Shown here one piece after another: positions 11,601-37,527 of a stretch of 64,000 nt of DNA (positions are counted from its first letter, which is position 1; each line of letters starts with the position of its first letter). The translations under genes were made by a program, and so were the position numbers. The stretch comes from Lytechinus pictus (Eukaryota), in NCBI RefSeq assembly GCF_037042905.1, contig NW_026974241.1, forward strand, positions 1 to 64,000, in the 5' to 3' direction. The notes beneath the pieces are model-generated. The model was given only the letters and a program-made list of their open reading frames with translations. It had not been told where the DNA came from and made no database searches.

Positions 11601-14600
11601 AATGGGTTTCCAATGAAACTTTGATGCTCACTGGGTGATAATTTAATAAGAGGAAGGAAAAATAATTTACAACATTAGTAACCTTGTTTCAAGTGCTTGA
11701 CACAAGATTAATTGTTCATAATTTAGCTGTCATATCATTATTTTTTTACATCTTTAACAAACAAATAATCAATACATTACTTGGATATTTGGTACACAAG
11801 AAACTTGTTATAATTTGCAACACTTCATTTTCCCGCAACTGTAAGTCATCCTAAAAGCTGGCCAAAAGAAATTGGTTGTATTCAAAACCTACATAGCCCG
11901 GGCTGTTTTAAAATTGCAATGGGGGGGGGGGGCCTTTGTTGCCCCCCTCTTATCTCAGTCGTTGATAATGCATTTGCAATGAAGACTGGCACGCACGTCA
12001 CTCATGACATAATCCCCACACTGGATAATTAATAGTACCAAACTTAATCAAATTAATTTCTAATTAATTAATTATGCTAATTTAAACATAAAATCATAAT
12101 ATGGCTGTAATTCTTTAAAGGTAGCATACCTTAGTCTTGGCCATGTCAACGATGTACTGGTCACCTTTGACACACTCCATGACCTCAAAGCCATCCCGGT
12201 CAACGACCTTTGCCTGAGGTTTTGCTGCCACCATGAGTATCCTGTCTCCCGTGATGCTGTACTGTAAGGTTCGAATCTGATGGCTAAGGTGGATAAAAAA
12301 TGATAATTATAGTTACAGTTATATAGCGCTTATTGTACAACGCCTACTTAGCTTGTTGTACGCGAGCAAATGGGAGGCTGAATGTCAAACATTCGTACCG
12401 TTGCACAAAAGACGTACCATCCAAAATGTACCGTTGCACGGCTTTAGGAGGTGACGTCACAATACGATTTAATTCATTGCGCTCGGTAAAAATGAACAAT
12501 ACGCGTATAAGCCAGCTGGCTAAATGCGCAAGGCTGCCCAAGGTCTTGTGCGCTTGTGGGATTTTGCTTTCTGCTTTCGGTATTTTTGCTCCCTTTTCAT
12601 AGATTACTATAGGGATAAACTCTTTGTTTTTTCATATTTTCGCTAAATTCCGAGGCGTTGTACAACACAAATAGCGAATATTCTTATTCGTGCAATGGTG
12701 CGAGATTTTGCATTCGGTGAAAGAAAGAAACGCTCTATTCAACTCGGCTCACGCCTCGTTGAATAGAGCATCTTTCTTTCACCTCATGCGAAATCTCGCA
12801 CTCATGCCTATTCGCTATTTGTATATTACATTCTGTTACCAACTGTTTTACATTGCAATTATTATTATCTTGGTCATCAGACCCTGGCATGCCCGCAAAG
12901 ACAATGTATGCAGTTCCATGAATTTTCTCCAGTTTCTCCAGTGGAAAGTCTGCATGTTCCGCCAAACCTAAAACTTAACCTCCCGAGTCTAAATAAACCC
13001 TAATCCTTATCTTTATTATTATGAATCAACAACTCTATTGCAATGCTAACTCTCACCCTATGCCCTCTGAGATAATAAGACCAGAGCAAAGGTCGTGTCA
13101 CCATGTATGCACCCTCTCCACTCCCTGGGGAGCATTCCAACAAGATTCAATTACTAGGCATACTACATAGGCTTTCACATCCTACCGGGTACCCATTTAA
13201 CACCTGGGTGGAGAGTGACAAAGTGTTGACTGATGCCTTGCCAAAGGACGCTAGGTACAGGGATTTGAACAAACGACCCTCTTACTACGAGGTGAGAATC
13301 TGAACTGGTACACAACGCTTCCAAATAAGGCTTGTCTATAGACATTGATACATGTAACTAAGTGTTTGGTGTTAGACAAACTACCCCACTATGGCTAGTA
13401 TTCTGAACTCCAGTTTAACTTAATCCACGGTCTAAGTTAGTCTGCATGCGCAGACTGAAATTTGACACTTTAACCAGTTATACCATGTCAAGCGTGAACT
13501 TAGGCTCGACTCCAAACTCTGTCTGTGTCATTCATAGTACATACATGTAGCACACCTATTCTCATTACCCCAGACTATGCAAATTGTCAAAACCAAAATT
13601 CTGTGCCTGCAGACTAGGTCAAGTCTAGACTAAAACTATGGTAAGCTGTGAGTGTCAAGTATGTGTTTGCTTCTTGTAACTCTTTTTTTTACTGAGATGT
13701 TTCCTATGATTTTATTATTAAGAAAACTAGTTAGAGAGATCTGCATCCCATATGGCTCCCCATAGATAAACCAAAATTTTAGACAACAGCAAAAACCAAC
13801 AATAAAACCATAGTTCAGAATATGGGTCATTCTCAATAAACACACAATTCGAGGTTTCTAAAATCTTACCACAGACACCTACGTATGTTTTACTTACAAC
13901 TTAATCAGACTCTACCAATTACTGGAGAACTGCTAACATGTTCACATTAATTTAGATTACAAAACATAAACGCCTTCAACTCCCTTAAAATAATTCCAGG
14001 TTTACATCAACTTTCATCAGCCCTGACCAGCCCTGTGTATCAATGTGTAATCATGAAATCCTTCCAATTACTGCAGAAAAAAGCTTTATTTACATTTATT
14101 GTAACCACAAGATCTGGGGACTGTTTCATGAAAGTTGCCAGCACTGACAAGTTATCATCTGACAGTTACCATAGTAACAGTCAGGCAACTGTAATTCATA
14201 AGCAAATTAAGACCATAGATAGCTATCAGATCTGACATCTTGGTCCTGTTGCAGAAAGAATTCAGTTTAAGGACGTTCCACAGTTAAAGTGAAATCCATG
14301 TCATTTTCACCAAACTTTGCACATAGATACTTTAGAACCTTAATATTTGAAATATGCAAAAGTTAATATAGGTCCATGTGCTTGATTTTTTGCTATAGAG
14401 CTTCAAAGTTCACCTAAATTGATGTTCTTAAAAATTGCGCATTCAAAAGAATTTGGCATTTTTAGACCGCCCAAGATTACTACAATGAGTTTAAACCTTT
14501 ATTACTCAGTCAAAATACATGAAAAAGTCATCAAATTTCGCAAGAGAGTTAATAATTGTATCGTTAGAATGGAGAATCTATTTATAGTGCTATTTGTTTG

Positions 14601-16910
14601 CAATTTTAAGTTTAACAGCACTGCCAGTTCTTAAAAATGGCGTAAAAGATAACAAAATCCCAATCTAAACAAGTGGAATGCCTCTGGCCGTCTCACCTGC
14701 ATCACGCGATTCAATATAGCAGCAGTGCTGATTTTGAAAACTACTATAACTCGCACAAGATGTTCAGTGATACTTGGTTACTCTTATTTCCACGTTTTAT
14801 GAACTAGACCAATACACTTATAGAGATATGATGGCAATTCAACAAATACCCCCAACGTGGCCAAAGTTCTTTGACCTTACATGACCTTTGACCTTGATCA
14901 TGTGACCTGAAACTCGCACAGGATGTTCAGTGATACTTGATTACTATTATGTCCAAGTTTTATGAACTAGACCAACACACTTTCAAATTTATGGCTGTAA
15001 TTCAACAAATACCCCAATTTGGCCAAAGTTCATTGACCCTAAATGACCTTTGACCTTGATCATGTGACCTGAAACTTGCACAGGATGTTCAGTAATACTT
15101 GATTACTATAATGTCCAAGTTTCATGAATCAGATCCATAAACTTTCAAAGTTATGATGGTAATTCAACAGATACCCCCATTCGGCCAAAGTTCATTGACC
15201 CTAAATGACCTTTGACCTTGGTCATGTGACGTGAAACTCATGCAGGATGTTCAGTGATACTTGATTAACCTTATGTATAAGTTTCATGAACTAGGTCCAT
15301 ATATTTTCTAAGTTATGATGACATTTCAAAAACTTAACCTTAGGTTAAGATTTTGATGTTGATTCCCCCAACATGGTCTAAGTTCATTGACCCTAAATGA
15401 CCTTTGACCTTGGTCATGTGACATGAAACTCAGGCAGGATGTTCAGTAATACTTGATTAACCTTATGGCCAAGTTTCATGAACTAGGTCCATATACTTTC
15501 TAAGTTATGCTGTCATTTCAAAAACTTAACCTCAGGTTAAGATTTGGTGTTGACGCCGCCGTCGCCGTCGCCGCCGTCGCCGTCGGAAAAGCGGCGCCTA
15601 TAGTCTCACTCTGCTATGCAGGTGAGACAAAAATGTGAAATTTCAGTAACAAACTACAAACGTACAATAAATGCTGCACTTTATTCAAAATCCATGTCAT
15701 TTTCACCAAAATTTGCAGAGTTGTAAAGGAAGGTATACCTAAGAGGTACAAACATTAAAAAATAGGGGTTCATGTGTTGTTTTTAAACTATCAGCATTTT
15801 TATTAGAGCAAATGTGCTTTTTAAAACACCAAAAATGCGCCGAATAATTTGTATCTATGTGAAGAAAAAATCAAAACCACTCTACCATTTATTCAAACTC
15901 GGGGTAATATCCGTGATTCTTGGCAGCACTGCAGAGTAAAGTATTTTGAAATTGTAGATAATTTTTTTTAATCGTCCATGGAATAATTCCACTTTTTAGC
16001 TTCATGAAATAACACATCGGATCTGCAGTTAAAGTGCAGAAGATGAGAAAAATCAGCTCATACCCGCAGCTAATTAATCACCTGTTCATCCATTGTGACG
16101 TCAGCGCGCAGTGTAAACTATGCGCAGATCATAATGCGCACAAACATAACTGTGGAACGTCCTTAAATGCAATTTTAAAAAGAATCAAGTGCAAGTCCCA
16201 AGTAAGTGTTTTTGATGTGTTAAAAATCAAGTTGCAATTGATTTTTGAGTTGCGTTTGATTGCAACTGTTAATGCAGTGGGCCCCTTGTTAGATGACAAA
16301 TAATAATTGAACGTCCATCAGAACTCCATTTTTTTCAATAGGCTGGCTTACCATTCAAAAGGTTGGAAAGACCTGAAGGAGTTCAATGAAGGATCCATAG
16401 CAGCAAAGTCCCAGAAACGCACATCAAAGTCATAACCACCAGTCACAAGCCTAGAACCTGATGGATCCAGAGCTACAGCCGATACCTGAGCAGGGGGCGT
16501 AACACAAGTAGATAATATAATCAACATGCTTAATACAATGTTTGTACTTACTATGCATTATTACCCTGACTTTAGCACAGCTACCCTGATAGGAAGCTTG
16601 AGCATTCAAGGAATTCCTTTCTACAAAGTACCCATTTACTACACCTAGGTGGAGAGTAAGGCAAATGAGGATAAACATCTTGCCAAAGGATGTGAGTGCT
16701 GCAGTGGGATTTGAGAGATACGTATTTAGTCAAATTAAGTTTGCGCATTGCATTACTTATCATGTACGCGTCAAAGTGCGACTCGAAGTCATACTTAAAT
16801 CTTTGTGAAACACCCCCTGATTACTTAAAACTGAGAAAAATTATACTCACTGATTTATTGCCGTGATTCAGCACTATCTCATGGGTTGCAGGAATCTTTT
16901 TCTCTGGAGG
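2602..16910 (-). CDS. WDR70: WD repeat-containing protein 70 (13 exons; 5' exons not found in window)
   Basis: GT-AG exons with consistent phases: 16910-16851, 16485-16352, 12283-12130, 11518-11442, 10974-10797, 10284-10185, 9695-9611, 8310-8175, 7520-7420, 6383-6304, 4970-4842, 3237-3069, 2710-2602 (TGA); 503 aa. WDR70 motifs: KIPATHEIVLNHG, VSAVALDPSGSRLVTGGYDFDVRFWDFAAMD, DRDGFEVMECVKGDQYIVDMAKTKGHTAML, SVVRCMWHPKLNQI, RDAILRHAKDAEENPLWIAPAY. Confidence 0.93.
4162..4732. mobile_element. Kolobok-type MITE (TTAA TSD, AGG terminus) in WDR70 intron
   Basis: TTAA|aggtcaagtccaccc ... gggtgaacttgtact|TTAA. Confidence 0.75.
4897..5341. repeat. Tandem repeat, 4 x ~111 bp, spanning a WDR70 splice acceptor and exon start
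   Basis: Units beginning catctg(c/t)ttcttataagccataatctcctgagg start at 4897, 5008, 5118 and 5230. Confidence 0.9.
8423..9216. mobile_element. piggyBac-like MITE
   Basis: TTAA|ccctatcttaactggg ... cccagtttaataaggg|TTAA; CCC/GGG termini. Confidence 0.75.
12320..12825. mobile_element. Palindromic non-autonomous element (two nested hairpins)
   Basis: Inverted pair ttgtacaacgcc / ggcgttgtacaa, plus a long hairpin aaatagcgaata...gctctattcaac-tcggctcacgcctc-gttgaatagagc...tattcgctattt. Confidence 0.6.
13115..13322 (-). mobile_element. tRNA-derived SINE (degenerate)
   Basis: Minus strand shows a B-box-like gttcaaatcc and core ctccacccaggtgttaaatgggtacccggtagg, shared with the SINE at 37200. Confidence 0.65.
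14271..16162. mobile_element. Non-autonomous TTAA-specific TIR element (Kolobok-type GG terminus)
   Basis: TTAA|ggacgttccacagtta ... taactgtggaacgtcc|TTAA; perfect 16-bp TIR. Confidence 0.85.
14667..15633 (-). mobile_element. Helentron-associated (HINE/DINE-1-like) non-autonomous element with internal tandem repeats
   Basis: Subterminal IR gtctcacctgcat (14690-14702) / atgcaggtgagac (15616-15628); partial IR gtctcac at 15603; GCC/GTC microsatellite at 15555-15585; ~162-bp repeat units at 14759, 14922, 15084, 15246, 15438; A/T-run ends without a TSD. Confidence 0.75.
16540..16710 (-). mobile_element. tRNA-derived SINE fragment
   Basis: Minus-strand core ctctccacctaggtgtagtaaatgggtac resembles the other SINE copies in the window. 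Confidence 0.5.
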
Positions 16911-17170
16911 CTTTAAAAGAACAAGACATAAAATAAAAATATTATATTCTAAATGCAAACACTTCAATGCTTAAACTGATTGTGGTGTGGTTGGCAAACT
17001 CAAAAAAATTTATTATGATGTAGTATATGCAATTTTTCATGCTGAATACGAATCTGGCAATTGTTTCCCGTAATTTTGTCTCAATTCGACACAAATCAGG
17101 AAAAAGACCACGGTTAGGGAACGCCCACTAAAATTGTTCAAAAGTCTACCGATTACGTAATCGTTGTGTG

Positions 17171-17186
17171 ACGTCATCAAGGGAAT
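17171..17186 (+). promoter_or_regulatory. Subterminal inverted motif ACGTCATCAAGGGAAT upstream of KolX (overlaps CRE TGACGTCA at 17169-17176)
   Basis: Exact reverse complement at 31287-31302, upstream of the transposase ATG. Function is inferred. Confidence 0.55.
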
Positions 17187-17277
17187 ATCAAGCAGTGGGA
17201 TCGCTCGGCCAAGCGCGCGTATCCATTGAATTTTCACAACAAGTTCTCGCGAAACATTTTAAATTCAAGCACAAATC

Positions 17278-18956
17278 ATGAGTGATCTTTCAGGATCAGA
17301 GAGTGAATATGATCCTGCCCACTTGTCATCTGATCAAGATTCTCCATGGTCGAATTCAGAGAGTGAGCAAGAAGAAGAATTTGCCAGAGAAAATCAAGTA
17401 GAGGCCGGTCCTGATATTCCTGCTGGCATGCAAGCAGCGGGTATTTTGCCGTACCAATTCGAGCCCGAGTTCCAACCAGGGGAAGAAATTCAGAATGTTG
17501 GTGCCATCCAAGAAAATGACATTGAGGGTAGACTTGGAAACAACAATTGGTAAGATTATCTCATACATAATCGTATTATTAATACTCCGTAACTAGTACC
17601 CTGAGTGTCTGAAAAAGATGTCTCATCTGAGAAGGTCGGATTGGAAGTGACGGAGCACTAGCGTGCGCTGCAGCCGCTGCTACCCGACGCTTCCGGCTGG
17701 AAACACAGCTCAGTTACGTTGCTATTAAAAGCCGAAACGAGGCTGGTGAACGGATCTGAGCTGTGGCTGCTGCCCGATGCTTTGACCTGAGCTGAGGCGC
17801 TTCGAATTCGATGGAGTGAACTAGGAATCATTTTACTTGACCTAACACTTGGTATCTTGCAGTCTAATAAATGTTTTCATTTTGTTTTTCAAATTTCTGT
17901 TGTTCATGCAGGTGTTCATGCAGCGGAGGATGCCAAGCGATGCCTCGAGTTGTCGAGTCGTACTGCTGCAAAGAAGTGGCTCAGGTAGTGGCGATGATGG
18001 ACCAGTACACTGCTGCAGAACTGAACTGCATCACAGAGCACCCTGGCTTTGAAGGGGTTTGTTTAAATCCGTGGGTTTTAGACACTGCATACTTAGGGTA
18101 TCGTCAGCAATATGGTGACAGAGCACGGCATGATGCAACTGAAAATGAGTGAGTGTTTTTTCATGAACAATTGCACTTATTTTCTGCAATCTAATATTGG
18201 AATAAGAAAAAAATTATAAAAAAAAACATGATTTTTATCAACTCAAAATACTCAATTGTCCTGAATGGTATCATGTTTTATATCATTTAAAATTATGAAA
18301 ATATGTATCATAAGACATAAGGTAAGTGTTGTAATGAGCTACGGTGATATATATTTTTGAATGGTTATTTCCATTAGCAGTCTTCAATTTTATTCTTTTT
18401 TGACTCAGAGGTGTTAACTACAACCCCCTCCTTACTTATGAATCACCTAAAATATATGCACATGTAGTAGTCAGCATAGGCGGGGGGGGGGGAGGGAACG
18501 TGTCCCCACCCCCTAAATTTGAGGTGGGGGGACGATCCCCCCTAAATTTTTATTTGATCACCTTTTTTTTGCTTGTCAAAAGATTTTCTTGTCCCCCCCC
18601 CCTAAAATTTTGGTTGATAACTTTTTTTATTGGGGGGGGGGGGGTTGCTTGTCAAAAAATGTTGGTAATCCCCCTAGATTTTTTGACTTCCGCCGCTAAT
18701 GGTAGTCAGTAGGATTTAGGGGAAATTTTAATGATGTAGATTTAGAAATCATGTGATGTTCTGTATCTGATTTACTTATTTTTAATTTCTATTTATTTTT
18801 TGTAGGAAACACAGGCACGTTGGCTATCGGCAGCTCGCAAGATGGTGTTGGGGATTTCTAGGGAGATCTGTGCGCGTCCCCCTACCTTCCTGTGCGGTGA
18901 CTCACATCCGAGCTACTTATCCATCGGACATTTACAGAGGTTTTGAAGATGCGTAG
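17278..18956 (+). CDS. KolX-type transposon accessory protein with P2X7 C-terminal ballast-like Cys-rich domain (219 aa, 3 exons)
   Basis: Exons 17278-17549, 17912-18148, 18806-18956 (TAG); GT-AG, phases 2/2. Acidic N-terminus with PYQFEP, then WCSCSGGC..ESYCC..CITEHPGF..VCLNPWVL..NEKHRHVGYRQLARWCWG..LPSCAVTHIRATYP..YRGF. AATAAA at 19306. Confidence 0.88.
18475..18701. mobile_element. hAT-like MITE in KolX intron 2
   Basis: 8-bp TSD GTAGTCAG on both sides (18467-18474 and 18702-18709); ends cataggcgg / ccgctaatg. Confidence 0.7.
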
Positions 18957-20010
18957 ACCTTTTTTATGTTGATTTCAATGAAGGCGCCTCTGAATCAACA
19001 GAGACATACATGATTGATTCCATGACAAGGACTGGATGTACTTAAGTCTTAAACATTTTATCGAGTGCCATTATTTTGTGATCTCTCAACTAGAAGTACA
19101 TGTAATTTGAAAGAAATTTTTTGCCAAGTATACCTGGTGTGTAGAAGAAAATTTCTTTTTGTCACATTTTTGACTGATAAAAAGTCATAAAGATTCTGAT
19201 GTTTTTATCACTGTGCTAAAGACAAGCACTCAGAGTTGTTTTATTATTGTATGTTTTGATGAAATAACAGGGAAGTGCTGATTGTATTTATTTCTGTTTT
19301 CTTTAAATAAAGGTGTTCAAACCAACTTAATTTTCTTGCGTTCTTTTCCAAAGTCAGTTTAGGCAGTCTTACTACAGTCCACTTCTGTTATAATCTTAAT
19401 ATTTATGGCAGCACTCATGCAGTACATATGAAATTGGTACTGGAAAACTGCCTGTCATTATAAATTACTTTATCTGATTATCATTATAACAAGAGTGAAC
19501 TAATGAAACCAAACATTTTGGGTATGTTTGGCCTATAATCTAGGCAGCGGCTGGTGCTATTGTCTTTTGCTGCCAACTGTTAATGTAAACAAACAACGAT
19601 TTGCAGCCCACAGCTTATACTACAGTTAGCGTTGGTCAATTTTTTTAAATTATGGTCAACAAATAGGTGTGGAAGTTTCATACTAAAATTATGTGTTGTC
19701 TGTTGTTGATAAACAACGGCAACTATTAATGCAGGACCGGAGTGTATAGGCTGTGCTACTTTGTAGCCCACTGTTAACAGTTGAACGCAAAAGACAATGG
19801 CAGTAGCCCCGGGCAAGACTACAGGCTAGGAAATGTTGGATGATAGATGAATGATTGAATGTTGCAAAATTGCTTTGACTTAGATGAATATAAGGTAGAC
19901 TTAGGCAGAGTTATCTGTATTTAAATTCAGAGGTAAGAGCATTGTACAATGTAGATTTGATGGAAGTGGAGAACATGTGAAAGAGGGACAAAAGAGCGAT
20001 AGTGGAATCT

Positions 20011-20167
20011 GGGGCCCGTTTCATAAAGAACTGTGACTGTTGTAACTTTGCCATTATGGAAATTACCATGGTAACATTGCTCAGCAGCCAATCAAAATCA
20101 AGGTTACCATGGTAGTTGCCATAATGACAAAACTACCAACTGTTGTTACTCTTTATGAAACAGGCCC
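20011..20167. mobile_element. Harbinger-like palindromic MITE in the Kolobok intergenic spacer
   Basis: ggggcccgtttcataaaga ... tctttatgaaacaggccc. Confidence 0.6.
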
Positions 20168-21062
20168 AAGGGGCAAGAGTGCATGTAAAGAGGAATCCAA
20201 CCAAGATAAAAAGTTGTTAAAAGAGGGGAAAGAAAAATAATACAATAGGTGAAAGTGTATTATATCGGAGTAACAAGAAAGTTATGAATTTCTGAAAGTT
20301 GTAAAAATTTGTAATTTGTATACCATTAACTATCATGGAGGCTTCACCGTATTGATGCTGTCATCTTGATGGAGGGAATATTTTCCATTTGCCCAATATA
20401 CACAAATGTGTATTGCATAAAAAGTTATTTTTATTCACATTTTTACTTAAAATTATATATGGTATTTTTGCTCAGGAACATAAAAGATGCTGATATTTCA
20501 AGTACTACCGGGAGGGGGCCCTACTTATGGGTAATACACAATTCCCTGAGAACTGAGTATACAGCCCATTGGAAAGTTGTCCCTACCACTTGTTATAATT
20601 TACTTTCCAAATTGCCAACTTGCAATGTACAGTCTCGGTGATCTCATTTTTAAAACCTACATATAAAAATCCTTTATGGTTGTCAACAATATTCAGTCTA
20701 AAATTACAATAGTCCACTCCCATTATAATAAGACTTTCCAGGCCAAATCAATTACCTCTAAATAAATGCGGCATTGATTTTACACTTTATACTTGCATAA
20801 AAAATATGCCAATGCACAGTTTAGACATTTGGAGCATTGCAACAAGAGCGTCCTTCCAGTGCACATATAATGGTAGTGGACTGTATTACCATAAACTATG
20901 CAGTAGCTGTAGAAAGACAAGAGACAGAATGCTTTTTTTTTTGTTAAAAAATCCTGCAAACTATTATATTCTCAGAGAAGCATTGATTTGCAAGTAGAAA
21001 TGAGTGCAAGAGACATAAATATGAATAAATATAAGCTGGTCAATAGACATGTTATGGCTTAA

Positions 21063-21450
21063 CTCGTTCAGGACAATCGACCTTAAGTGGTTAAGGTAAA
21101 TCATTTTTGTTTCAGAGCTCTAAAAATTACACCAGGTACATTAGTAAAAGAGAGAAAAAAAAACTATGCATACATTGCACTCATTGTTGAGTGACCATAC
21201 TGCCAGGAATTTTATGAGGATAATCTTTAAACTCCTCAAATTGGCAACACATTGGAAGAATTGAAGACCAGAGTTTTTCATCGAAATTGGCGTTTAAAAA
21301 ATATTATCCAAGTTCCAAACCATGTATGTTGGTTTCAAAGACATCACATTCAATTGGAAGCATGTAGCATTAAAATAAATATTGCTGTTGCCCATTTGAG
21401 GAACGAAATGTGATCACTTTAGTTGTTAATTAATTCCTGTCCTGAATGGG
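21063..21450. mobile_element. piggyBac-like MITE in the Kolobok intergenic spacer
   Basis: TTAA|ctcgttcaggaca ... tgtcctgaatggg|TCAA (one TSD mismatch). Confidence 0.55.
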
Positions 21451-21479
21451 TCAAGATAAGTATAACCATGGAGGTAGTT

Positions 21480-21955
21480 TACAGAGTTGCTTGTACAAAT
21501 GCTTGAAAAAATTGGGGGGAAAAAAATGTTTTCCAATTTTAGTAGATGTTACATCAGGGAAGATTTTGGAAGCTACCTGAATCATCAAATTCAGCTGTTT
21601 AAAACATGGAACACTTTGAAATGCATTTCAAATGTATTTCTACCACTTCACCTACATTTATAAACACAATAACATTCATACAAAGAAATATCTATGTAAT
21701 ACATGCTATATAACTTCTTACAGAGTTGCTTGTAAAAATGCTTTAAAAAAATGTTTTCTGATTTTAGTAGCCGTTGCTTCAGGTCATGCAAGATTTTTTT
21801 TAAGCTACACGACACATATCCGAGTCATCAAATTCAGCTGGCTAAAACGTGAAATACTTTGACATGCATATCAAATGTACTTCAACTACTTCATCTACAT
21901 TTATAAATACAATCACATTTATGTAAAGAAATATCTACTTATTACATGCAAATAA
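21480..21955. repeat. Diverged tandem duplication, ~240-bp period
   Basis: acagagttgcttgta(c/a)aaatgctt at 21481 and 21720, followed by parallel downstream sequence. Confidence 0.65.
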
Positions 21956-22629
21956 CACAGTAGAGAAAACATTCTGATAATGCTCTTAAATCTTCAAAAT
22001 TTTATACAATTATTGCAGTTACTAGTATTCCGAAATTGTATAGACCATGAAAGTTTTCTTTTGGAAACCACTGTTGGAGCTACAGTGGTCGTAACCGGCC
22101 AGCATGAGAGATTTTGAACCACAACTCATCATGATAATCATTGACCAACGTTTCAAATGAATAGTATTTCTAACAAAACTCCTTGCAAAGAAGAATTGTA
22201 CATGTGTTACTGTTGAACAAATCTTTCCCAACAATATTTCCTTAAAATTATGTAACTGATCACTCACAAGTATGTGGTCGACTTTACTGTTGAACAAAAC
22301 TTAAACAAATATAATTCCATAATAGATATGATTCTTTTTGTTTAATAATTTTGAAGCAAAGGTATCAAATTGCTCAGTCATCTGTTTTGCCTTCACAATG
22401 TTATTTGTACAACTACATGTACATCAGAGATGTATGTCTTCATATAAAATTCGCTAAAAAATATAGTTCATCAGATGAAAATGGCATGTTTAATCATAAG
22501 GAATCTTTTCTTCAATAGAGTAACTAAATTTTCTCTTAAATGAACTTATGTGTTCAATCTTTCATTCGTTCCAATTTATCATGAAGCTGTATACGATATT
22601 AGCATGATAGGGTTTACAGTTCGCTTATT

Positions 22630-25600
22630 TTAATTAAAACGACTTCGGTGATCCTGAACAAGTTCCTCCTTGGGAGGAAAGGTATATTCACTGCATAAAG
22701 ATGGCGGGGCTTCCTTCCTCTCTGGCAGTTGAGATGATCCTGTGCACAATCGTCTGACCTCATCCATCAGATCATCAACAAATTCTGAGATACAAAAAGG
22801 TTAAAAAGTGAGGTTCAACATGTACAGGTCAGCTAGACCAGCTAATGGATATACAAATATGTTGGATGGTATTGATTTACCAGTGTTTTTCTTATGCCAT
22901 GTTAGTATGCTATAAAATGTACCACCAATGGGCATCAAGGAAAAAAAAAAGCTCTTTAATCTTTATAGATTATATTGTTGAGAACAGTTATAGTGATCAA
23001 CATAACACATGAGAAAAGTAGGATTTAACTGATGTTACTCTAGTAATGAATCATTGCCATGGAATCATCCTTTTTCATAATATGTTTCTGATATGATGAT
23101 GAACCTATAGTCGATAACACACAGAACAAAATAAACTCACTGAATGTTTTTGCTTCCTTAACAGCTTTCACTGATGCCTTCCCTGGCTTGTACTTTGGTT
23201 TGCTGACCATGTACCGCTTGTCCCCTTTCAACGTTTTTGCCTGCTGTCGGTTGCCATTTTCATTGAAGTCCATAGCAGCAAGTCTGAGCCTGAATGATAA
23301 CCAGAAAATAAATGCACATAGTAAAAGCATGTCTAATACAGTGCGTAAACACAATGCAACATGCAAATTGCTTTTATTTTTCACCCGGTTTAACTCAGAA
23401 GATTTTTCATTCTTGCACAAGAAAAACAGTTCAAAGAAAGGATACCAAAAAGTCACTTATCAGGGCTATCTGAATTTTAAACATAAAACTGTCTGCTCTT
23501 TCATTTGATACCCATACCACATGGAATGATCACGAAATACCAAAGTTAAGTTTATTCAAACTAATGCTTGAATTTTAATTTTATAAAATGAATGTGGCCT
23601 CTTACCACTAGCGTACCTACGGGGGGGACGAGCAACAACCCATACAAAATACATATCACTGCCCCCCCCCCCTGACGAGCTTGAAAGACCTTTTATGCCC
23701 CCCCCCCCCTGACGAACTTGAATACCTTTATTGCCCCCCCTGACGAGCTTGAAGACCTTTTTTTTTTTTTTTTGCTTTTTCAATTTTTTTTCAATAACCT
23801 TTATTTTTTATTGAAGACCTTTTTTTTCTTTCTTTTTTTCTGGTACAATAACCTTTTATTTTTCATTGAAGACCTTTTTTTTCTTTTTTTTTTCTGGTAC
23901 AATAACCTTTTATTTTTTATTGAAGACCTTTTTTTTTTTTTTTTTTTGGCGGCCGATTTTGCCCCCCCCCCCCCCCTGTGGAAAATCCTAGGTACGCCAC
24001 TGCCTCTTACTATCTGTCAGACTTTTTTTGGGGGGGGGGGTTATAAAACCATTTGCATTATTCCATATGGGTTTTAATCCAAACATTAGATCTACCCTTT
24101 TTAATAGAGTCCTATAAATATCCACTTTTGCTTGGAATTACCCACATTATTTTGTGTGTATGCTAAATAAAGAAACATGGTCCAATGTAACTCTTCTCAT
24201 AGAATATATAGTGCATTTACCTGCTAGTCATTCCTTCATACGAATAGGACTTCAGCTTGGGCGCATACCGGTTCACCAGACTGTGATATGACTCCAGGGA
24301 AGATGTCTGTTGGTCTCCAGACAACTTTTTCACATCGTTCAACAACATGGTGCTTTGCACGATACCTGTTAGTTTTTCACAGACTTTTGTGCCTGAAAAA
24401 TGGATACAAAAGGAGCGGAATCATTAAACAATTGTTGCCTTAGGTAACCAGTGTATCATGCTTAATGAGCAGGTAACGTCATAATTACAGTTTTCAAAAT
24501 GGAAAAAATGCAATAAAATTGAATCAACATACTTTATGAGAGTAATGGCATAAATTGATAATGAATGGTATTGGTAGGTAAGGAAAATACAATATTCATA
24601 AGGTTTGATTTTTCTTGTTTCATATGATACAGATCTAACATTAAACAAATGAATCTTATTCATGAATTTACCTGGTGTGAGCCATTTTTTCTTGCGACCT
24701 TGAGCTTGCAAGTCACCATGAAGACACTTGGGAAAGACTTCAGAATGACCTTCATGGATCCCTTGGATGTGGTTCATAAGAGACTTCCACTTGGCCACCC
24801 TCAGATCGTCTTCATCCTCTTCACAAGTTGCAGCCACCCAATACATGTGGTTGGTGATGCTTGGTTCCCATTGCACAAGTTCTTCACAATCCTTTTGCTT
24901 CGCCAAGGCATGCACCTTCTTTCCAACACCTAATATAGGTAATAAAAAATATACCAAAACTAAAAACAAAAACAACAAAAATGCCTTAATTGATGACATC
25001 ATGCGAAATGTTTATCATAGATAACTGCCTCACGTATTTATATGAAAAACCAAATGCAAGCATGATGCAAAAGAGAAACAAGGAGATGGAATGTGAAATA
25101 GAAGCATTAATTTTTGGACTAAATCACTACTCGCTTCACATGAAATGACATCACAGAATTCAGGCCTTTGACAAGTGAGATACTGCTGTTTTTTGAAGCT
25201 CGCTAATTTGAGTGCTTGTAAAGCAAAAAACTCACTTGGTAAGCAATTAAATTAGATAAAACTCACATTGTTTTCTGAGTACTTGCAGCATTCTAGCAGT
25301 GTATAGTTGCTTTTGCTTAGGACCAGGAGTTTAAGCACTAAATATTTAATCATAAACAAGTCGAATTAATATTTCATTTTAAATATATTTTGCAAGACAC
25401 AAATGTATGATAATTACTCACCTTTGGATACATGCCAGACATCATACACATGAATAATGTGTGGAAGTGTGATTCTGATGTATTTGGCAAGTTGTCTATG
25501 TCGGTCCGTTACCAACTTCCTGATTACTAGTCCCTTGTCATCAAGAAAGTTGACAACTCTCTTGAAACCTTCCAACTCCATGTGGTACGAACCCTTCACC

Positions 25601-28600
25601 TCATTACTCTATGAAAAAACAAAATACAAAATATAAATCAACATTGCATAACACACAATAGTGATAACATGAAATAACAGTTTGGGGCTGGAACATCAAA
25701 ATAGCCTTTAAATTTAATCAATTTAAATTGGCAGACATGAATATAATAAGTAACCAAGACAAGAGGAATTGTGTTTCAACTTAACCCGTCTTGGCAAAAA
25801 TGCAGATTCTTTATATTTACTTTCTATTTCATGAAATAAAACTAGGCACTTGTGGTCATATGTATCATGGGAACATGAACTAAGGACAGAAAATCAGACC
25901 CACCTGAACCAGCTGAAAATCAACAATCTTGTTGACATTCAATTCTAGGGCAGTGTATACCCCAAACTTTGCAGAATGTCCTGGACTGTCCGCTCTCCCA
26001 TCTCCCCCAATGGTGAGTGGCAGACCCCGTTCACACAGTTCAGTGAGCAGATGGTTCTGTTGCTTCTGCCATTGATTGGTGATAGCTGGATGCAAAACTT
26101 TCTGCTGGTGTCGGAAGAAAGTCCTGCGTGTGTGCGTTGCTACGTTAAAATGCTTCAGCACTCGCAGCGACTCACTGGGGCTCCCGCCAGCAAACAGGAT
26201 TGCCGCTGACAGCTGGAGGTTGCCAGCAGGATAGGGGCCTATCCATGGCTGGCTCTCCCATGTTGTCGACTTCTGGTCACAAGACAGGCACTCCCTTGTC
26301 ACAGAAAGGAGGCTTCCAACTTCCCTCTTTACAAGGGACACATTTGCAGACTTGCAGGATGGGCAAAACTGCAACAGCTCCAAAAGCTTAGACTCGTATA
26401 CAATGTATTTTTTTTCCTTGTGTGGAGGAATACCTTGGGCTGGGGCTTCCCATGTGGCCTTTTTGCTTGATCGCCTTTTCCTGTATTTGAAATAAAAGAC
26501 AAAAAATAAAATTGTTTAGAAATACAAAAAAAATCCTAAAAGACGATGTAAGAATTTCATCAGCCTGCTGTTGCTGTAATATATAAGAAAAATTATCTAA
26601 AATGCTTTATTTATTAAATCACTATGATATGTGTCTGAGGTTTTTCTCAAAAGAATTTACAGTACTAGTATTGATTTTGAACAGGATAATGAAAGAACTA
26701 ACCGTTTTCTCTGTCTTTTTTGTGGCTTGGCAATAACACGCTCATCTGATGATGAAGATGAAGATGATGGTGGTTTGTATCCAGGTGAGGAGGGTTCTGC
26801 GGCGTCACTTTCTGGAGATGATAACCTTTCTTCCTCCGCTTCCTTCGCATCAACTTTCTCTTCTGGTATATCCCCTTTGTCAAAAGAGGTCCCTCTTGAA
26901 ATAAAGGCTGGAATATCGGGTGGTATCTGTGAACCTGTGTTCTGCAGAAGTACAACCCTTTGGGACCCTGAAAATGTCCATGTATATTTTACTTTTACTT
27001 TGGTTGTGAAACAAATTTTCAGACATAGGGGAACACAACATATCTGCAATCCAGGGTGTAAGTTATCTGTGGCCCGGACTACTGCGTAGGACTTATTCTT
27101 CAAGTGGAATTGCAACATTTACACCTTCAAATTGGTACCCGTAACTTATCTTTCTAGCAACATTGTGAATAATATGTGACATACTGAGCATGACTCCTGT
27201 TAATGGTTTTGGTACTGCGCATATGCAAATCAGCAAAATCGCTTGCAAGTATCCAAAAATATACAAGGAACACAGAATGATGCAGTATTCTATTAAATGT
27301 AAATGTATAATAGCTATAGATGTTCATGACTATCATAGCCAAGTTAATTAAACTACATGACACTGATTCTGTCAGATTGGGAATGAATATCAGTAATTCA
27401 ATATTTATAGCCTCAATAAATATATTATCTAGAGCATATGTTTACAAAAACTTTCCACAACTTAGCAGCACCAGCCTCAAAAGGAAAATTGACAATATAG
27501 ATAAACAGATGAAAAATAAACTTACGTTTAACTCTTGTTGCTACAGAGACCTGTATCCCAACAGAGGTTGTATGGCCATGCTGCTGAAATTCCATAGCTG
27601 GATCTTTGAACGGCTGTTAATTGGATATCAATACAGTAGCCAAAATATGCTGAATACATGTACATACCACTACCAGTGACATGCAAAAAAATTATATACA
27701 TAAATAAAGTATGGTTTCCAGCACAAATACTAATCAAAACTACACCTGAATCAATTTTGGGATAAACTGTAATTTCAGTCACAGCCAGGTATGTTAAGAC
27801 TTGGAAGACAAGTATTATGAGTTTTTCATGAACCATATGTCTTGTTTGAATCACATGCATAAAGGTTTTGGTTTCTTTGGAAAGAAAAAAATGTCAATAT
27901 AATTTACATGTATCCTAAATTCTGCTAAATTCATTGTGGTTGATAATTTACTCAATATTATCCCTTATTTGCTGCTAAATTACCTTTTATGTTTGTTTGC
28001 TTTCATGTCTTTTCACGGGGAGGGGGTGCACAATTTGAAAACAAATTTATACCTGTTCATCAAAGGATTCTTCAGACTCAGATGAATGTTCATCTGTCCA
28101 TTGGCTGCATCCTGGCTCATCAGTGTCTGATGGACTTTCCATTGATGCAGGCTCCACTGCTGACCCTTGCTCCTCAGCATCCCTAGCTTCAACAGATGTT
28201 GACAGCAATTCATCCAGCATCTGTGAGAATAATTTAAATAAAAAATGAGAGAAAAATATACACAATAGCCATGTGTTCTTATTTCTAAAATAATAAACTT
28301 AAGGAATTAATAACATATTAACATGCTAATTTCAGCCTTAAGTTTGGGCTGTGTAACATGTATTTTTTTTAATATGAAATAAACCATGATTGAATTGAAT
28401 GGAATTAGAAATCATCTTCCTTCAGATCTATTTTTCATTCAGACCTCAGTTAGATTTCACTACCTACTTTATGATGTATGGCAGTGAGTACAAACTGTTG
28501 CAAAGTCACCCTACATAATTTCATATATGCATTGTATGGAGTAATCATTGGTGGGATAAGAAAGTCCAAATATTACATTTTAAATTTTCAGTACGAGAAA

Positions 28601-31139
28601 TTAGATGTATGCATATTTATGCAAATTGGAGCACCTAATTTGCTTAATTGGTAAAATGAGCATTAAGTATTTATTACAATTATTAAAAATCATAGAAAAT
28701 AAAAAAAGTGAGAAATTAAACATTGGTGGGACATGGAACCTCTAACGCTCTAACATTTTATTATTGAGGGCTATCTATATTAATATGCAAATTAAGTAAT
28801 GTCAAAAGACAAAATGATCTATATGTAATACTTTGGGGACATTTTAAAACTTATTTCCCGGAGTACAATACTTGCATTATTGCATCTTTAGGCAGACTTT
28901 CTGACTTATCAAGTATAAAAATGTAATACCACGAAAATAATCAAAAATACAAATTCGTTTTTTTTTCAAATAAAATTGTCAATTCATTCATTCCACTGTA
29001 TCTTCAACCATGACAATTGAGATGTTTCATTGTATTTATATCTCATTCAACCAAATAACTTAATTTAATTATATTTTGCACATTGTATCTCTACATTAAT
29101 CCCTGTATTGTAATTATTAAATCAATTCAGTTATGTTGTATTTGCTATCACAAAGATAATTTTCATGCCTTATTGTATATCCAAATCAATTCTTATAGAG
29201 CCCAATAGTTCATCCCATTTTCATTATTTCTGTACACTCTTTAAAAAAATTTTATTTCTATCAAAAAAAATTTCTTCTAAAAAATATAGATCTACATGTA
29301 TAGCTCCATGGTATAAACTATTTCTACAATCATTATTGTGAATCTTTTAACTCTGTATATTATTGCATGAACAATTTTGTCCAAACTTATAATATCATGT
29401 TGTTTAGAAGGTTCCTTTCATGCAGATTTGTTTACCCTTCTCATGACTTTGTAAAACAAACACTGAATTGAATTCATTTCTTTTCCATTAAAATATACAA
29501 AATCAAGACAAAGAAACATTACAAAACATAAAAATGAGACAATATACAATATGATATTAGGCCTGGAATCTGGATCTGGAATAAAAAAAAAAACTTTTTG
29601 GCTTTTTAAAAAAAAGGTAAAAATAATCTAACGTTTTAATTCCCAGGGTAGCCACTTCAGTTAGGAAACTGTTCTACCACCGGGCCCTGCATAACATAAT
29701 AATTAATACCTGAATGTAATTGTAATTATTATCCTTCTCCAATCTAAATGCTGAGTGCCTAGTATTTTAGTAAGGCAGGAGGTCCCTTTTTTAATGACTC
29801 GGTCGGGTATCGAACCCAAGACCTCCCGTTCATGAGGCAGGCGCTTTACCACTAGAGCCACCATACCCCCAAAAGAGTTTGTATATTTCCTTACTTGAGA
29901 AATGAACCACAATGGCACAAACAACTGAAACAAGAAAACTTTTAGACCTAACGTTGGGCCTACTGTACCTCTTCACAGCACTAGCCACGTACTACAATGT
30001 AGATCCTGTCTTGAAATACAACTCACAATTAATAGGATTTCTAATTCGCAACAGAAATTTAGAATTCGTAGACCTGTTTCCAATGTCATGAATGTGGAGC
30101 CTGGACTCTTGAGGAAAGTTTGAGGATCACTTCAATTTCCTTTTTTATTTTCGAGGCGTATCCTATGGCAAGTTCCCCCAAGTCTACGCACACGCGTATC
30201 AGCGCAATTCTAGTAAAAGAAGATACGCAACGAGCACGAGCTCTACACATGCAATACCTAGCCATAGCCTAGGTCTACAGGCTGACAGGTATTTAAAAAA
30301 AAATCTGACTCAAAATGATGGATTTAGGGCATTTCATGTGACGGCATCAAAATGCAGCCTTTCTCATCAAAATCCCCGAATCGTGTGCAAAGATTGAGTG
30401 CGCAGACATGGGCTCGGGGTAGGCCTACCATTTTTTGACAAATCTGAAAATTACAGTAGGCCTACGAGGTTTTTCCAAGAAAATCCTATAGGCCTATTTT
30501 CTTTCATTTTTTTAATGAGAAATTTAGTACAATTACTAAAATACTAATAATAATATAAGGAACATTATTAACGGAAAGATTTTGTTAATAAATAATAAGA
30601 AGAAATTCATGTTAATCTAAACTCAAATTGTTTGATGCGCAGACTTGGGGCCCACCATCATAAACACCTTCAAAATAAAAAATAAATAAAATAAGGAAAT
30701 TGACGTGATCCTCACACTTTCCGTCGTTGAACTTGAACTGACTGACCACAACAATTGCAAAGATAAACTTTAAACAAAGTCTATTACTAATAGATAATAT
30801 GCTCACCCTCATTTTCTTTCGTTTGTCCGCTGCTGTCCGTGACCCACTCCTCTTTACTTGCATTGATGACCCACTCTTTATTTTAGGCACAGCGTCGGGC
30901 TTCAGCCGCCGGGTCCTCTTCATGCCAAAAGCAGCATGCAACCCGTCATCAAAATCCGCATCTTCGAAGTGGCTACTGCACACCACGCTCCAGTCACTGG
31001 GGCCGCTCCAATTTGCTCGGGTCAACTTCACTTTCGAGACCCATATTCTGCGTAAATTTGCATCTTTGGGAAACAAATGCAAGCTGGCACCATCCTTCGT
31101 AGTGTTGCTGCAACCTCCGACGATGCATCTCGCCGGCAT
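22630..31139 (-). CDS. Kolobok-type transposase: THAP + C4 zinc finger + DDE nuclease (783 aa, 10 exons)
   Basis: Exons 31139-30807, 28220-28053, 27613-27526, 26967-26703, 26480-25904, 25608-25422, 24929-24672, 24392-24221, 23289-23141, 22784-22630 (TAA); all GT-AG, 2352 nt open. THAP: CIVGGC..FP..W..CSSHF..AVP. C4 finger: CPSC..CLSC. Catalytic motifs: GDGRADSPGHSAKFG, LVTDRH, DVWH, TSSLESYHS. Also NHxxxxH..CLH. The low-complexity exons 2-4 are the least certain. Confidence 0.88.
23606..24002. mobile_element. hAT-like MITE in transposase intron 8
   Basis: 8-bp TSD CCTCTTAC (23598-23605 and 24003-24010); TIR cactagcgtaccta / taggtacgccactg; internal gaagacc-poly(T) repeats. Confidence 0.8.
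29643..29866 (-). mobile_element. tRNA-derived SINE in transposase intron 1
   Basis: Minus-strand A box tggctctagtgg and B box ggttcgataccc, followed by a non-tRNA body. Confidence 0.7.
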
Positions 31140-31357: not shown

Positions 31358-34300
31358 TTATGAGCGTGAGAAACTATGAAATTAACTTCTAAAACCAGCA
31401 ATATCTTATTAATCCTAGATAAATAAATCATATTAATAATGTTAAAATTCTTAGAAAAACAATTGAAAACTAATAAGAGCAAAATATAGTTGCATGACTC
31501 AGAACCTTTAAGCCTCCCACCTCTCCAACTACTCAAGCTTCTCAACTCTTTCTGATTTCCAGTCCTTTTGAGAAATACACTCATTTCCGAAAATTACTCT
31601 ACTTTCTAACCTCCACTTTCTCGCCTATCCATTTTAATTCTACCTCTATTCTGCATTTTTACTTTTCTTTTTTTGTGTGTGTGTGTTTAAAAAAAAATTG
31701 TCCTCCACATCACATGGACATTGCCTCTTGGTTGATTTGAAGAAAATCTTCCGGGGTGGGTGGGAAGGGTTAATTTAGCCGCATATGACACGTACTCTCT
31801 ACTACACAATTGGCAGAAGTTTACATTTTATGTGTAAGTTGGGGAGTTGCCAATTTAGTCATACTATTTTCACTGATTAAAGGTAATTAAAAGTACCTGT
31901 CAGAGACCTTTAACGCCTACATATTTGTCCTTGATTTCTTTAACCTTTACGTTTGTTTCGTGACCATCAAACCTCAACGACTTTATTTGATTTGTGGTTT
32001 TTTTTCTATATCAACTACTCAAGGAAAAGATTTGCTCAGTGAAGCAGAGATATAAAATTGATAATATCCCATAGGTATAAGAGGGAGTCAAATACTTAAA
32101 ACAATAATATCATTGTCGCTATAAGCATAGGACGGGAAATAAAATATAAGAGCGTTTTCATAAGTTTTCTGTGTATACAATTTACATGTTATATATAATC
32201 AAGTTTTAAACAGAGATGCAGAATGAAATGTAATTGGACAGATTACACAATCAAGGTAATGGAATTACAATAAATGTCGATCCATAAACATGAGTAAAAA
32301 AAATCCTTACTAATTTATAAGCTACCTCAATGTCATTCAAAACTTTAATTAGAGGACTGGTGACGTTTCAGCTGAGTCTATATATTAATAAATAGCTGAG
32401 TCTATATATTGATAAATAGGTTTTTAAGAAAAAGCAAGGAGATACGACCTCTAAACCCCCTTGGAATAAGGCAGTAGCGCAATTAGCCCATAATAAATTT
32501 AGGCGGCAAGACATGGTGTATGGGGCCCAATTAAAAAAAGTTGCGATTGAGTGAAGCGAGCGAGCAAAAATGTTGACCTGTTTCAATACAAAAATCTAAT
32601 TTTGTTATATATTTTGACTTATTCAGAGAAATAATATCATTTTTCCTTTCATTCCCCTTTCTTTCTCTTTCCCTTTTTTTCTTGGTCGTCATGTTTTTTA
32701 GGGCGGATTCATGGCCCGAGCCCCCCTTCCCATCTTTACGCAAGTGGATTAAGCACCCCTTATTTCAATTTTCTAATAATTGTTAAAGATCATGTTATCA
32801 TAAAACGGCAAAGAAGATCATCCAGAAGCATGAGAAGTATAAGCAATAAAATTGTTCACTATGAGGGACATTCTGTATTCCATTCAAAGAAAAATGACAA
32901 TACATAATGTTATGATATTGATAATATATTATCACTGAATAACATTTCATGTATCATTTGAATGTCGTTAACTATTAAAGAGTTTATGTAATGGAAATGA
33001 CCATGAAAACCTACAAGTTAGAGTGCTTCTAATTTTCTGGTCAATTTTTCAAAAGATTTCAGTTCGCGCTTTGGGTTCTTATTAATATTTACATGTACAT
33101 AGTACCTAGTCTTGTTGTAGAAATGAGCTTAAAAAAAAAAGATCAGCTGGAAGGATTGACCCCCCCCCCGCTGGCCTTCATATGTGGGGCTTGGGACCCC
33201 CCAAAAAAAAATGAATGAAGGAGAATTTTTGCTCGCTCATTCGCAACTTTTTATAAATTTTGCCCTTTATAAAATTATTATGCTAACCCTTAAAAATTTT
33301 TGCTTAAAAATAAGCAGCAATTACTTTAGAATGGATACAATTTTCATCACACTGGATAAATAAAAATGCCCAAAAGAAATGCCCAATGTTGTTTGGACAC
33401 AAAATTACCCTCATGGAGCCACTGACCCCCCCCCCCCTCTAAATAAAAAAAAATCCCTCAGAGAAAATTTGTATCAGTCATCCCCCCCCCCGCTACCATG
33501 AACACCGATCGACACCCATACTTCAGTCGCCAACCGACCACGTACAAAATAACAAGCCCTTTGAATACATACCCTTATTCAAATATAATTTCAGAAAGAC
33601 TGATGCCTGATACAAAAGAACATCTTGCATGCTGAACCACCTGCTGAACCGGATCCAATTTACGAAAGAAAAGAAAATCGTTACCTTGTAAAATGATTTA
33701 CCACTATCAGGGAATGCTTGTTTGCTGTATGAATTTCATCACGTACACTTACTTCATGGGCTGGTGCGTTTTATATGCTATCCTACCACCAATCTACGTA
33801 CGGGTGAACTTTCTCACGATAAAACACCATTATTTTCCAAACTTCCAAATAAAGCATCTATTTGTTTATCAATTTTTTTCAAATCGTATGTGGTTGATAA
33901 ACTTCTTGCGAATCAAGTAAATGTCAATAAATGTGGTCAGCGTTTACGCACTTGCCATTCTTAATTATAAATAGATTGATTTGTTTTGACAGGTGTTTAT
34001 TGCTATCTGAAACAGCCCCCCCCAAAAAAAAAAAAAAATGTCAATCAATTTCGTCGAAAGTTGGTGGACTGGGATAGCAGATCATCTGAAGATTTGCACC
34101 GGACAAACAATTGCAAATAATTATGTCGTTGCACATGTGCAAGAGATTCCAATGCAGTCCCGGTCTACCAACTTTCGATAAAAGCCTCCCAGCTCTCCAT
34201 TGTGATTTAACTTGCATTTTCAAAGGAATTGGTGCGTTGTAGAGAGTTCCCCCGTAGTAAATGCGAAAACTCTCTATTTTCTCCTTTAAGAATTAAAATT

Positions 34301-37470: not shown

Positions 37471-37527
37471 AATGGACATATTTATCATTAAGGCAATTGT
37501 ATTGATTCGTTGTGCTTAAGTATAAAA

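What the first reader, a model, noticed from the sequence alone, without database searches (positions are those of the whole stretch)
16851..31139. 5'-incomplete WDR70 abutting a one-ended Kolobok: possible adjacent deletion and THAP-WDR70 fusion
Seen: the first WDR70 exon present (16910, PPEKKIP...) is an internal phase-0 exon. I found no exons for the WDR70 N-terminus (MGFxGFGKK, acidic tract, GPPLP) in 16911-64000. The Kolobok starts ~65-90 bp upstream, and its left TIR tip is replaced (actgattgtggtgtggttggca instead of aggttctgagtcatgc, with possible agreement resuming at aact). The transposase gene is on the same strand, and its exon 1 (THAP), exon 2 (acidic) and exon 5 donors are all phase 0. 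Inference: a deletion or rearrangement at the transposon end removed the WDR70 promoter and 5' exons. Splicing 28053 to 16910 would give an in-frame ~670-aa THAP + acidic + WD40 protein driven by the transposon promoter, i.e. transposase capture by a chromatin/repair factor. Alternatives: 5' exons beyond the window with SLC1A nested in a giant intron, a segmental duplicate, or a misassembly.
Basis: partly seen in the sequence, partly recalled or inferred. Interest (0 to 1): 0.8.

Follow-up and report, generated by a model that had tools for sequence, protein, structure and literature searches.

The report
WDR70 fragment beside a Kolobok transposon
In this sea-urchin DNA the conserved gene WDR70 lacks its first ~170 codons and promoter, and a large Kolobok jumping gene with a damaged end sits 64 bases upstream of the first exon present. 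Whether the gene is broken here or only stretched over a huge intron cannot be settled from this window, and nothing shows a transposase-WDR70 fusion protein.

Summary
WDR70 (minus strand) starts at 16910-16851 with an internal phase-0 exon. Its boundaries match the sea-star exon NLVNRIPASHEIVLNHGAKT exactly. Thirteen further exons run intact to the stop near 2605. The conserved N-terminus (MGFxGFGKK, FDxxxMFExTRR, GPPxPP, acidic tract) is absent from all 64 kb. I tested this with tool-derived N-termini from a sea star, a fish, another invertebrate and a coral; the controls hit.

A 14.5-kb two-gene Kolobok of the known Kol0 type (THAP transposase plus KolX) occupies 16975-31507, with TTAA on both sides. 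Its right tip is canonical. Its left tip starts AC and shows no inverted-repeat match. SLC1A (plus strand, 39180-61667) lies further upstream.

In the sea star the whole gene spans 9.7 kb. I therefore favour a structural break at or near the transposon's left end, meaning a deletion, rearrangement or recent partial copy (about 0.45). The main rival is an intact gene with an intron over 47 kb that holds SLC1A (about 0.3). An assembly artefact is about 0.1.

The THAP-WDR70 fusion is frame-compatible but has no supporting evidence (about 0.03). Earlier notes of this scan describe this same element and other Kol0 copies elsewhere in this genome.

The parts
16851..16910 (-). First WDR70 exon present (PPEKKIPATHEIVLNHGNKS). 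It is an internal exon, phase 0 at both ends.
   Evidence: Same length and phases as the Patiria exon. tblastn controls hit here.
2605..16485 (-). Rest of WDR70: 13 further exons. Core coding segments are 16354-16485, 12130-12282, 11441-11518, 10797-10976, 10183-10257, 9613-9696, 8175-8303, 7419-7517, 6308-6382, 4840-4935, 3068-3238 and 2605-2709, followed by the stop.
   Evidence: 190 of 226 near-invariant ortholog columns are kept, against 200 of 226 for Patiria. WD40 Pfam hit.
16911..16974 (-). 64 nt of retained intron with the polypyrimidine tract and acceptor. It ends in TTAA (16971-16974).
16975..16996 (+). Non-canonical left tip of the Kolobok. It starts AC, not RR, and has no match to the right inverted repeat.
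   Evidence: The terminus rule comes from PMC9587614.
16975..31507 (.). Two-gene Kolobok element of the Kol0 type, 14,533 bp, flanked by TTAA on both sides.
   Evidence: Paper PMC9587614.
17278..18953 (+). KolX (P2X7-ballast-like) gene. Exons are at about 17278-17550, 17900-18146 and 18801-18953.
   Evidence: Pfam P2RX7_C, E = 2.4e-6, above the curated cut-off.
23100..31139 (-). THAP-DDE transposase gene. Exon 1 is 31139-30807 (THAP) and exon 2 is about 28220-28053 (acidic). Further exons include 26383-25904, 25599-25414, about 24900-24600, 24360-24217 and 23456-23100.
   Evidence: THAP Pfam hit, E = 7.8e-17. Donors are phase 0.
17171..17186 (+). 16-nt motif ACGTCATCAAGGGAAT, 196 nt from the left tip. 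Its inverted twin is at 31302-31287, 205 nt from the right tip.
31488..31511 (-). Canonical right tip AGGTTCTGAGTCATGCAACT, preceded by TTAA (31508-31511).
31512..39179 (.). Stretch between the Kolobok and SLC1A. It holds no WDR70 exon. It holds repeats and a reverse-transcriptase fragment (34945-35271, minus strand).
39180..61667 (+). Complete SLC1A/EAAT-type transporter gene, oriented divergently from WDR70.
   Evidence: Pfam SDF hits on three exons, E = 1e-12 to 1e-20.

Best explanation
The window holds a promoter-less, 5'-incomplete but otherwise intact WDR70. Most likely the continuity of the gene is broken at or next to the left end of a young Kol0 Kolobok transposon.

Under this reading WDR70 and SLC1A were divergent neighbours. 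A Kolobok landed at the TTAA at 31508-31511. A later repair or rearrangement event at its left end removed or displaced the terminal inverted repeat, the WDR70 promoter and the exons for residues 1 to about 170. What remains is 64-86 nt of intron in front of the KKIP exon. The event could have been a deletion, another rearrangement, or the edge of a recent partial duplication.

The remaining exons are undamaged, so the event is recent. This may be one haplotype or one copy only. The break is inferred, not shown. No chimeric product is implied.
For: - The N-terminal exons are absent from all 64 kb on both strands, while control exons hit.
- The N-terminus is conserved from protists to vertebrates and is present in an echinoderm.
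- In Patiria the whole gene is 9.7 kb, and the N-terminal exons lie within 2.4 kb of the homologous exon. The intron in front of that exon is about 310 nt.
- All other WDR70 introns in the window are 4 kb or shorter.
- The left tip of the otherwise open element fails the RR rule and has no inverted-repeat match (PMC9587614).
- The element end lies only 64 nt from the acceptor. That is very unlikely for a random insertion into an intron over 47 kb, but expected if the junction is itself a breakpoint (inference).
- SLC1A is a complete, oppositely oriented gene with its own start. This fits a former head-to-head neighbour.
Against: - Nothing beyond 64,000 can be seen, so upstream exons may exist there.
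- TTAA flanks both ends, and the tip-to-motif distances are nearly equal (196 against 205 nt). Both are what a simple complete insertion with a locally damaged tip would give.
- WDR70 is probably essential, so a homozygous truncation is unlikely.
- The exons show no decay, which also fits a working gene.
- The true left end of this Kolobok family could not be defined, because no other copy could be fetched.
Confidence: 0.45

Rival explanations
1. The gene is intact with a giant intron. The 5' exons lie beyond the window, so SLC1A and the Kolobok sit inside one WDR70 intron longer than 47 kb. The Kolobok is an ordinary intronic insertion whose left tip was damaged locally.
For: - TTAA on both flanks and matching arm lengths.
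- All 14 exons are intact and as conserved as in Patiria.
- The acceptor and its polypyrimidine tract are intact.
- Nested genes are noted elsewhere in this genome by earlier, unchecked notes.
Against: - The homologous intron is about 310 nt in Patiria and about 1 kb in a fish.
- The other introns here are 4 kb or shorter.
- Nesting of a 22-kb multi-exon gene is required.
- A transposon end within 64 nt of the acceptor of so large an intron would be a roughly 0.3% coincidence (inference).
- The non-canonical tip needs a separate explanation.
Confidence: 0.3
2. Assembly artefact. The junction near 16975-16996 is a chimeric join or a haplotype switch in the contig, not a real molecule.
For: Young, long, multi-copy elements are classic places for misjoins. 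Sea-urchin genomes are highly heterozygous (general knowledge). The similarity between the ends stops exactly at the tip.
Against: - There are no N runs in the window.
- A repeat-mediated misjoin would switch inside the repeat and leave normal ends, not a novel 19-22-nt tip.
- No templated or duplicated source for the tip exists in the window.
Confidence: 0.1
3. Transposase capture. Transcripts from the Kolobok transposase promoter splice from 30807, 28053 or 25904 to 16910 and produce a THAP(-acidic)-WD40 protein of about 660 aa that replaces or supplements WDR70.
For: The genes share a strand. The three donors and the acceptor are canonical and phase 0. The THAP domain is intact.
Against: - No transcript or protein evidence exists.
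- The donors have nearer cognate acceptors.
- The transcript would have to pass the transposase terminal exon with its AATAAA signals, about 6 kb of secondary insertions, and the convergent KolX gene.
- Phase 0 at 3 donors is about what chance gives.
- The product would lack the deeply conserved WDR70 N-terminal motifs.
Confidence: 0.03

Closest known systems
Kol0-lineage Kolobok DNA transposons encoding a transposase plus KolX (Mob DNA 2022, PMC9587614)
   Same: Two convergent genes: a THAP-bearing DDE transposase and a KolX protein that matches the P2X7 ballast domain. TTAA on both flanks. The right terminus begins with RR (AG).
   Different: The left terminus begins AC and has no inverted-repeat partner. 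The element is intron-rich and carries secondary insertions.
Transposon-associated flanking deletions and rearrangements, such as P-element or Ac/Ds flanking deletions and imprecise-excision footprints (general knowledge)
   Same: A breakpoint coincides with one transposon end, and host sequence expected next to it is missing.
   Different: Classical intramolecular transposition keeps the inverted repeat intact at the new junction. Here the tip itself is lost or replaced, which fits end-joining repair better. The deletion itself was not observed.
Host-transposase fusion genes formed by splicing, such as SETMAR, CSB-PGBD3 and KRABINER (general knowledge)
   Same: A transposase DNA-binding domain and host exons lie on one strand with compatible phases.
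   Different: The known cases are supported by transcripts and conservation, and most join host 5' exons to a transposase exon. Here the order is reversed and no transcript is known.
WDR70 / GAD-1 family (Patiria miniata P0230; coral cDNA L004)
   Same: Exon boundaries, WD40 core and C-terminal motifs are conserved from residue 173 of the Patiria protein (P0230) to the end.
   Different: The N-terminal 170 residues, with the MGFxGFGKK and GPPxPP motifs, are not encoded within 47 kb.

Membership tests
Kolobok superfamily, Kol0 lineage | TTAA target-site duplication | tested here: met
   TTAA at 16971-16974 and at 31508-31511. The left one could be a chance TTAA in AT-rich intron.
Kolobok superfamily, Kol0 lineage | Termini 5'-RR ... 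YY-3' with terminal inverted repeats | tested here: not met
   The right end meets the rule (AG......CT on the plus strand). The left end starts AC, and no inverted-repeat match was found. The rule comes from PMC9587614. This copy is therefore defective at one end.
Kolobok superfamily, Kol0 lineage | DDD/E transposase, often with an N-terminal THAP domain | tested here: inconclusive
   THAP is clear (E = 7.8e-17). The catalytic exon gives only a weak Mutator-like Pfam hit (E = 0.0025, below the curated cut-off). No Kolobok transposase was available for comparison.
Kolobok superfamily, Kol0 lineage | Second gene, KolX, with the P2X7 cytoplasmic ballast fold | tested here: met
   Pfam P2RX7_C, E = 2.4e-6, 28.1 bits against a cut-off of 23.5, on the last KolX exon.
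WDR70 / GAD-1 | Conserved N-terminal motifs (MGFxGFGKK, FDxxxMFExTRR, GPPxPP, acidic tract) | tested here: not met
   Absent from the window. Present in Patiria, a fish, invertebrate L002 and coral, with variants in protists.
WDR70 / GAD-1 | WD40 core and C-terminal region collinear with orthologs | tested here: met
   tblastn with Patiria residues 173-664 gave 13 collinear hits from 16898 to 2617. Conservation is comparable to Patiria.
Host-transposase fusion gene | Chimeric spliced transcript or protein on record | not testable with these tools
   No RNA data are available. Exact-product look-ups of window ORFs found nothing. The sea-urchin WDR70 protein could not be retrieved.
Host-transposase fusion gene | Same strand and compatible splice phases | tested here: met
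   Donors at 30807, 28053 and 25904 and the acceptor at 16910 are all phase 0 and canonical.

The most novel reading that the evidence does not exclude
A recent deletion at a Kolobok end removed the promoter and first ~170 codons of WDR70. The remaining gene is now transcribed from the transposon, either as a THAP-acidic-WD40 fusion or as an N-terminally truncated protein driven by the left-end promoter region. This would be a transposase capture caught at birth, in the reverse orientation to known cases.
Probability: 0.03. Interest if true: 0.75.

Novelty: new member of a known kind. Interest (0 to 1): 0.3.

Why it matters
If the break is real, this is a natural allele in which a cut-and-paste transposon has disabled a deeply conserved chromatin and repair factor. 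It would also document a one-ended Kol0 element produced by failed excision and repair. That helps in understanding how Kolobok elements damage genomes, and it flags a possible error or null allele in the reference. If the gene is merely stretched over a huge intron, the case is ordinary. The fusion idea would matter for how transposase domains are captured, but it has no support yet.

Tried and rejected
It returned only bacterial multi-WD40 proteins.
- Exon-level protein searches found two close, probably echinoid, ENA fragments (P0151, P0152). Their contigs could not be fetched. One of them has two unexamined plus-strand ORFs 3-4 kb upstream of exon 2.
- KolX exon 1 has no relatives of suitable length in the protein collection.
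- Exact look-ups of the KolX exon-1 ORF and a 192-aa transposase ORF found nothing. No other copy of this Kolobok family could therefore be obtained to define its true left end.
- A filler-plus-exon alignment, meant to get past the length window of the protein search, was shredded by MAFFT and dropped.
- A clean profile (coral cDNA plus five window exons, A7) worked. It listed 120 orthologs, none from a sea urchin.
- Scan-note look-ups by sequence were blank.
- No repeat spans a reconstructed empty site.
- No templated source for the left tip was found.
- There is no synteny with the Patiria flanks.
- GPGPPLPK at 63856 is a repeat, not an exon.
- The MAFFT suggestion of a degenerate inverted repeat at 16944 was rejected as chance.

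Full report
**Layout.** The window has no N runs.

- On the minus strand, WDR70 coding exons run from 16910 down to a stop near 2605.
- A two-gene Kolobok occupies 16975-31507.
  - A KolX gene lies on the plus strand, with its ATG at 17278. Its last exon matches Pfam P2RX7_C at E = 2.4e-6.
  - A THAP-bearing transposase gene lies on the minus strand, with its ATG at 31139. THAP scores E = 7.8e-17.
- Further right are repeats and a reverse-transcriptase fragment at 34945-35271.
- A complete SLC1A/EAAT gene lies on the plus strand at 39180-61667. Pfam SDF hits three of its exons.
- Earlier notes of this scan name the genome as Lytechinus pictus and the element type as the published Kol0/KolX kind. 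I did not verify the species. I read the 2022 paper myself (PMC9587614).

**The first exon present.** Exon 16910-16851 encodes PPEKKIPATHEIVLNHGNKS. It sits behind a good polypyrimidine tract and AG, and in front of GTGAGT. The stop-free frame reaches back only to the TAA inside the TTAA at 16971-16974, and it has no ATG. It therefore cannot be a first coding exon. In the sea star Patiria miniata the homologous exon NLVNRIPASHEIVLNHGAKT has the same 20 codons and the same phase-0 boundaries.

**Is the N-terminus in the window?** I obtained real N-termini rather than relying on memory.

- A fish locus (L001) and an invertebrate locus (L002) came from exon-level protein hits.
- Full-length intron-less coral-like WDR70 cDNAs (L004, L005) came from a metagenome scan.
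- The Patiria protein P0230 came from a profile search built on L004 plus five window exons.

All of them share MG(F/V)xGFGKK followed by F(D/N)xxxMFExxxR. All but the invertebrate and coral sequences have a GPPxPP motif, and all have an acidic tract before the KKIP-type exon.

tblastn of these pieces against the window gave nothing better than E = 0.02, apart from low-complexity D-rich hits on the wrong strand. The control exon hit 16898-16839 at E = 4.5e-7 to 2.6e-5. Regex and charged-ORF scans were also negative. So the exons for roughly 170 residues are not within 47 kb upstream.

**Comparative gene structure.** Patiria WDR70 is a compact 9.7-kb gene. Its N-terminal exons lie within 2.4 kb of the KKIP-type exon, and the intron just before that exon is about 310 nt. 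In the fish they lie within 3.5 kb, and in L002 within 1 kb. In the window all other WDR70 introns are 4 kb or shorter. The Patiria flanks show no synteny with the window.

**The transposon ends.**

- Read on the minus strand, the right end is TTAA|AGGTTCTGAGTCATGCAACT. This is canonical for Kolobok (TTAA, 5'-RR).
- Read on the plus strand, the left end is TTAA|ACTGATTGTGGTGTGGTTGGCA.
- The right-tip 20-mer occurs once, allowing up to 3 mismatches.
- Local alignment of the right terminal 49 nt to 16900-17060 scored 12, against a shuffle mean of 14.6. No inverted pair joins the ends.
- The only significant shared sequence is a 16-mer, ACGTCATCAAGGGAAT. It lies 196 nt from the left tip and 205 nt from the right tip. 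Two shorter motifs, GAATCTGGCA and GCAAACTC, are shared out of order.
- The odd left tip has no source elsewhere in the window.
- I could not fetch any other copy of this family, so its normal left end remains unknown.

**Condition of the retained gene.** The 13 core exon peptides keep 190 of 226 columns that are at least 95% invariant among 114 orthologs. Patiria keeps 200 of 226. There are no stops or frameshifts. The fragment is therefore either functional or only recently disabled. An old pseudogene copy is excluded.

**Weighing the readings.** This part is inference.

- *Giant intron.* A simple insertion into a giant intron fits the TTAA on both sides, the near-equal arm lengths and the intact exons. 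It also requires three unlikely things. An intron must have grown more than 150-fold relative to the sea star. That intron must hold a whole 22-kb gene on the opposite strand. And a transposon end must have landed within 64 nt of its acceptor, with the tip damaged separately.
- *Break at the left end.* A break explains the missing exons, the abutment and the lost tip together. It also fits SLC1A as a former head-to-head neighbour. It requires a null or rearranged allele, or a recent partial copy, of a probably essential gene in the reference haplotype.
- *Repeat-mediated misassembly.* This would leave normal ends, so an artefact is less likely, though not excluded.
- My estimates are: break about 0.45, giant intron about 0.3, artefact about 0.1, and other or unknown for the rest.

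**The fusion idea.** Donors at 30807 (AGG|gtgagc), 28053 (CAG|gtataa) and 25904 (CAG|gtgggt) and the acceptor at 16910 are all phase 0. A protein of about 660 aa made of THAP, an acidic stretch and the WD40 body is therefore arithmetically possible.

Phase 0 is the commonest phase. Each donor has a nearer cognate acceptor. The transcript would also have to run past the transposase's last exon and several AATAAA signals, through about 6 kb of secondary insertions, and across the convergent KolX gene. The product would lack N-terminal motifs conserved across eukaryotes. No transcript or annotated protein could be examined. I put this reading at about 0.03.

**Comparison with what is known.** The element is a member of the published Kol0/KolX kind with one defective end. 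The gene is a genuine WDR70 ortholog fragment. Transposon-associated truncation and intronic insertion are both well-known kinds of event. The case is a new example, and only read-level or transcript data can say which kind it is.

Noticed in passing
4897-5341: Four tandem copies of about 111 nt repeat the acceptor region and 5' part of the WDR70 exon near 4935. Each copy encodes ...SRRGRHRNREEPQEIMAYKKQM. These are possible alternative acceptors or exon-duplication debris.
   Followed up: no
10664-10750: A degenerate partial copy of WDR70 exon 10797-10976 lies in the next intron. It is 47% identical to Patiria, and a 48-nt repeat links 10705-10752 with 10853-10900.
   Followed up: partly
14748-15545: A tandem array with a period of about 162 nt lies inside the 4-kb WDR70 intron.
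   Followed up: no
45193-48666: An element with 208-nt, 94% inverted ends is filled with a satellite of about 176 nt, inside an SLC1A intron. A CpG-rich block at 48.4-50.4 kb adjoins it.
   Followed up: no
17153-17186 and 31287-31320: Both Kolobok ends carry palindromic promoter-type motifs next to a shared 16-mer. The left end has ATTACGTAAT and TGACGTCA, and the right end has GTCACGTGAC. The two divergent promoters may be symmetric and possibly bidirectional.
   Followed up: partly
62967-63411: A MITE-like pair of 131-nt inverted repeats (93%) lies downstream of SLC1A.
   Followed up: no
L021:10001-19683: Patiria miniata WDR70 is compact (9.7 kb). It is flanked by a sulfotransferase gene and a GT4 glycosyltransferase gene, and no SLC1A lies within 10 kb.
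   Followed up: yes
L004:2-1768, L005:19-1995: JGI metatranscriptome contigs carry full-length, intron-less coral-type WDR70. They are useful as a scaffold for profile searches with exon pieces.
   Followed up: yes
30837-30920 (minus strand): The basic tail of the THAP exon (KRTRRLKPDAVPKIKSGSSMQVKRSGSR) weakly resembles the basic stretch after the FEQTRR motif of Patiria WDR70. At E = 1.1 this is not significant, and it is probably compositional.
   Followed up: no
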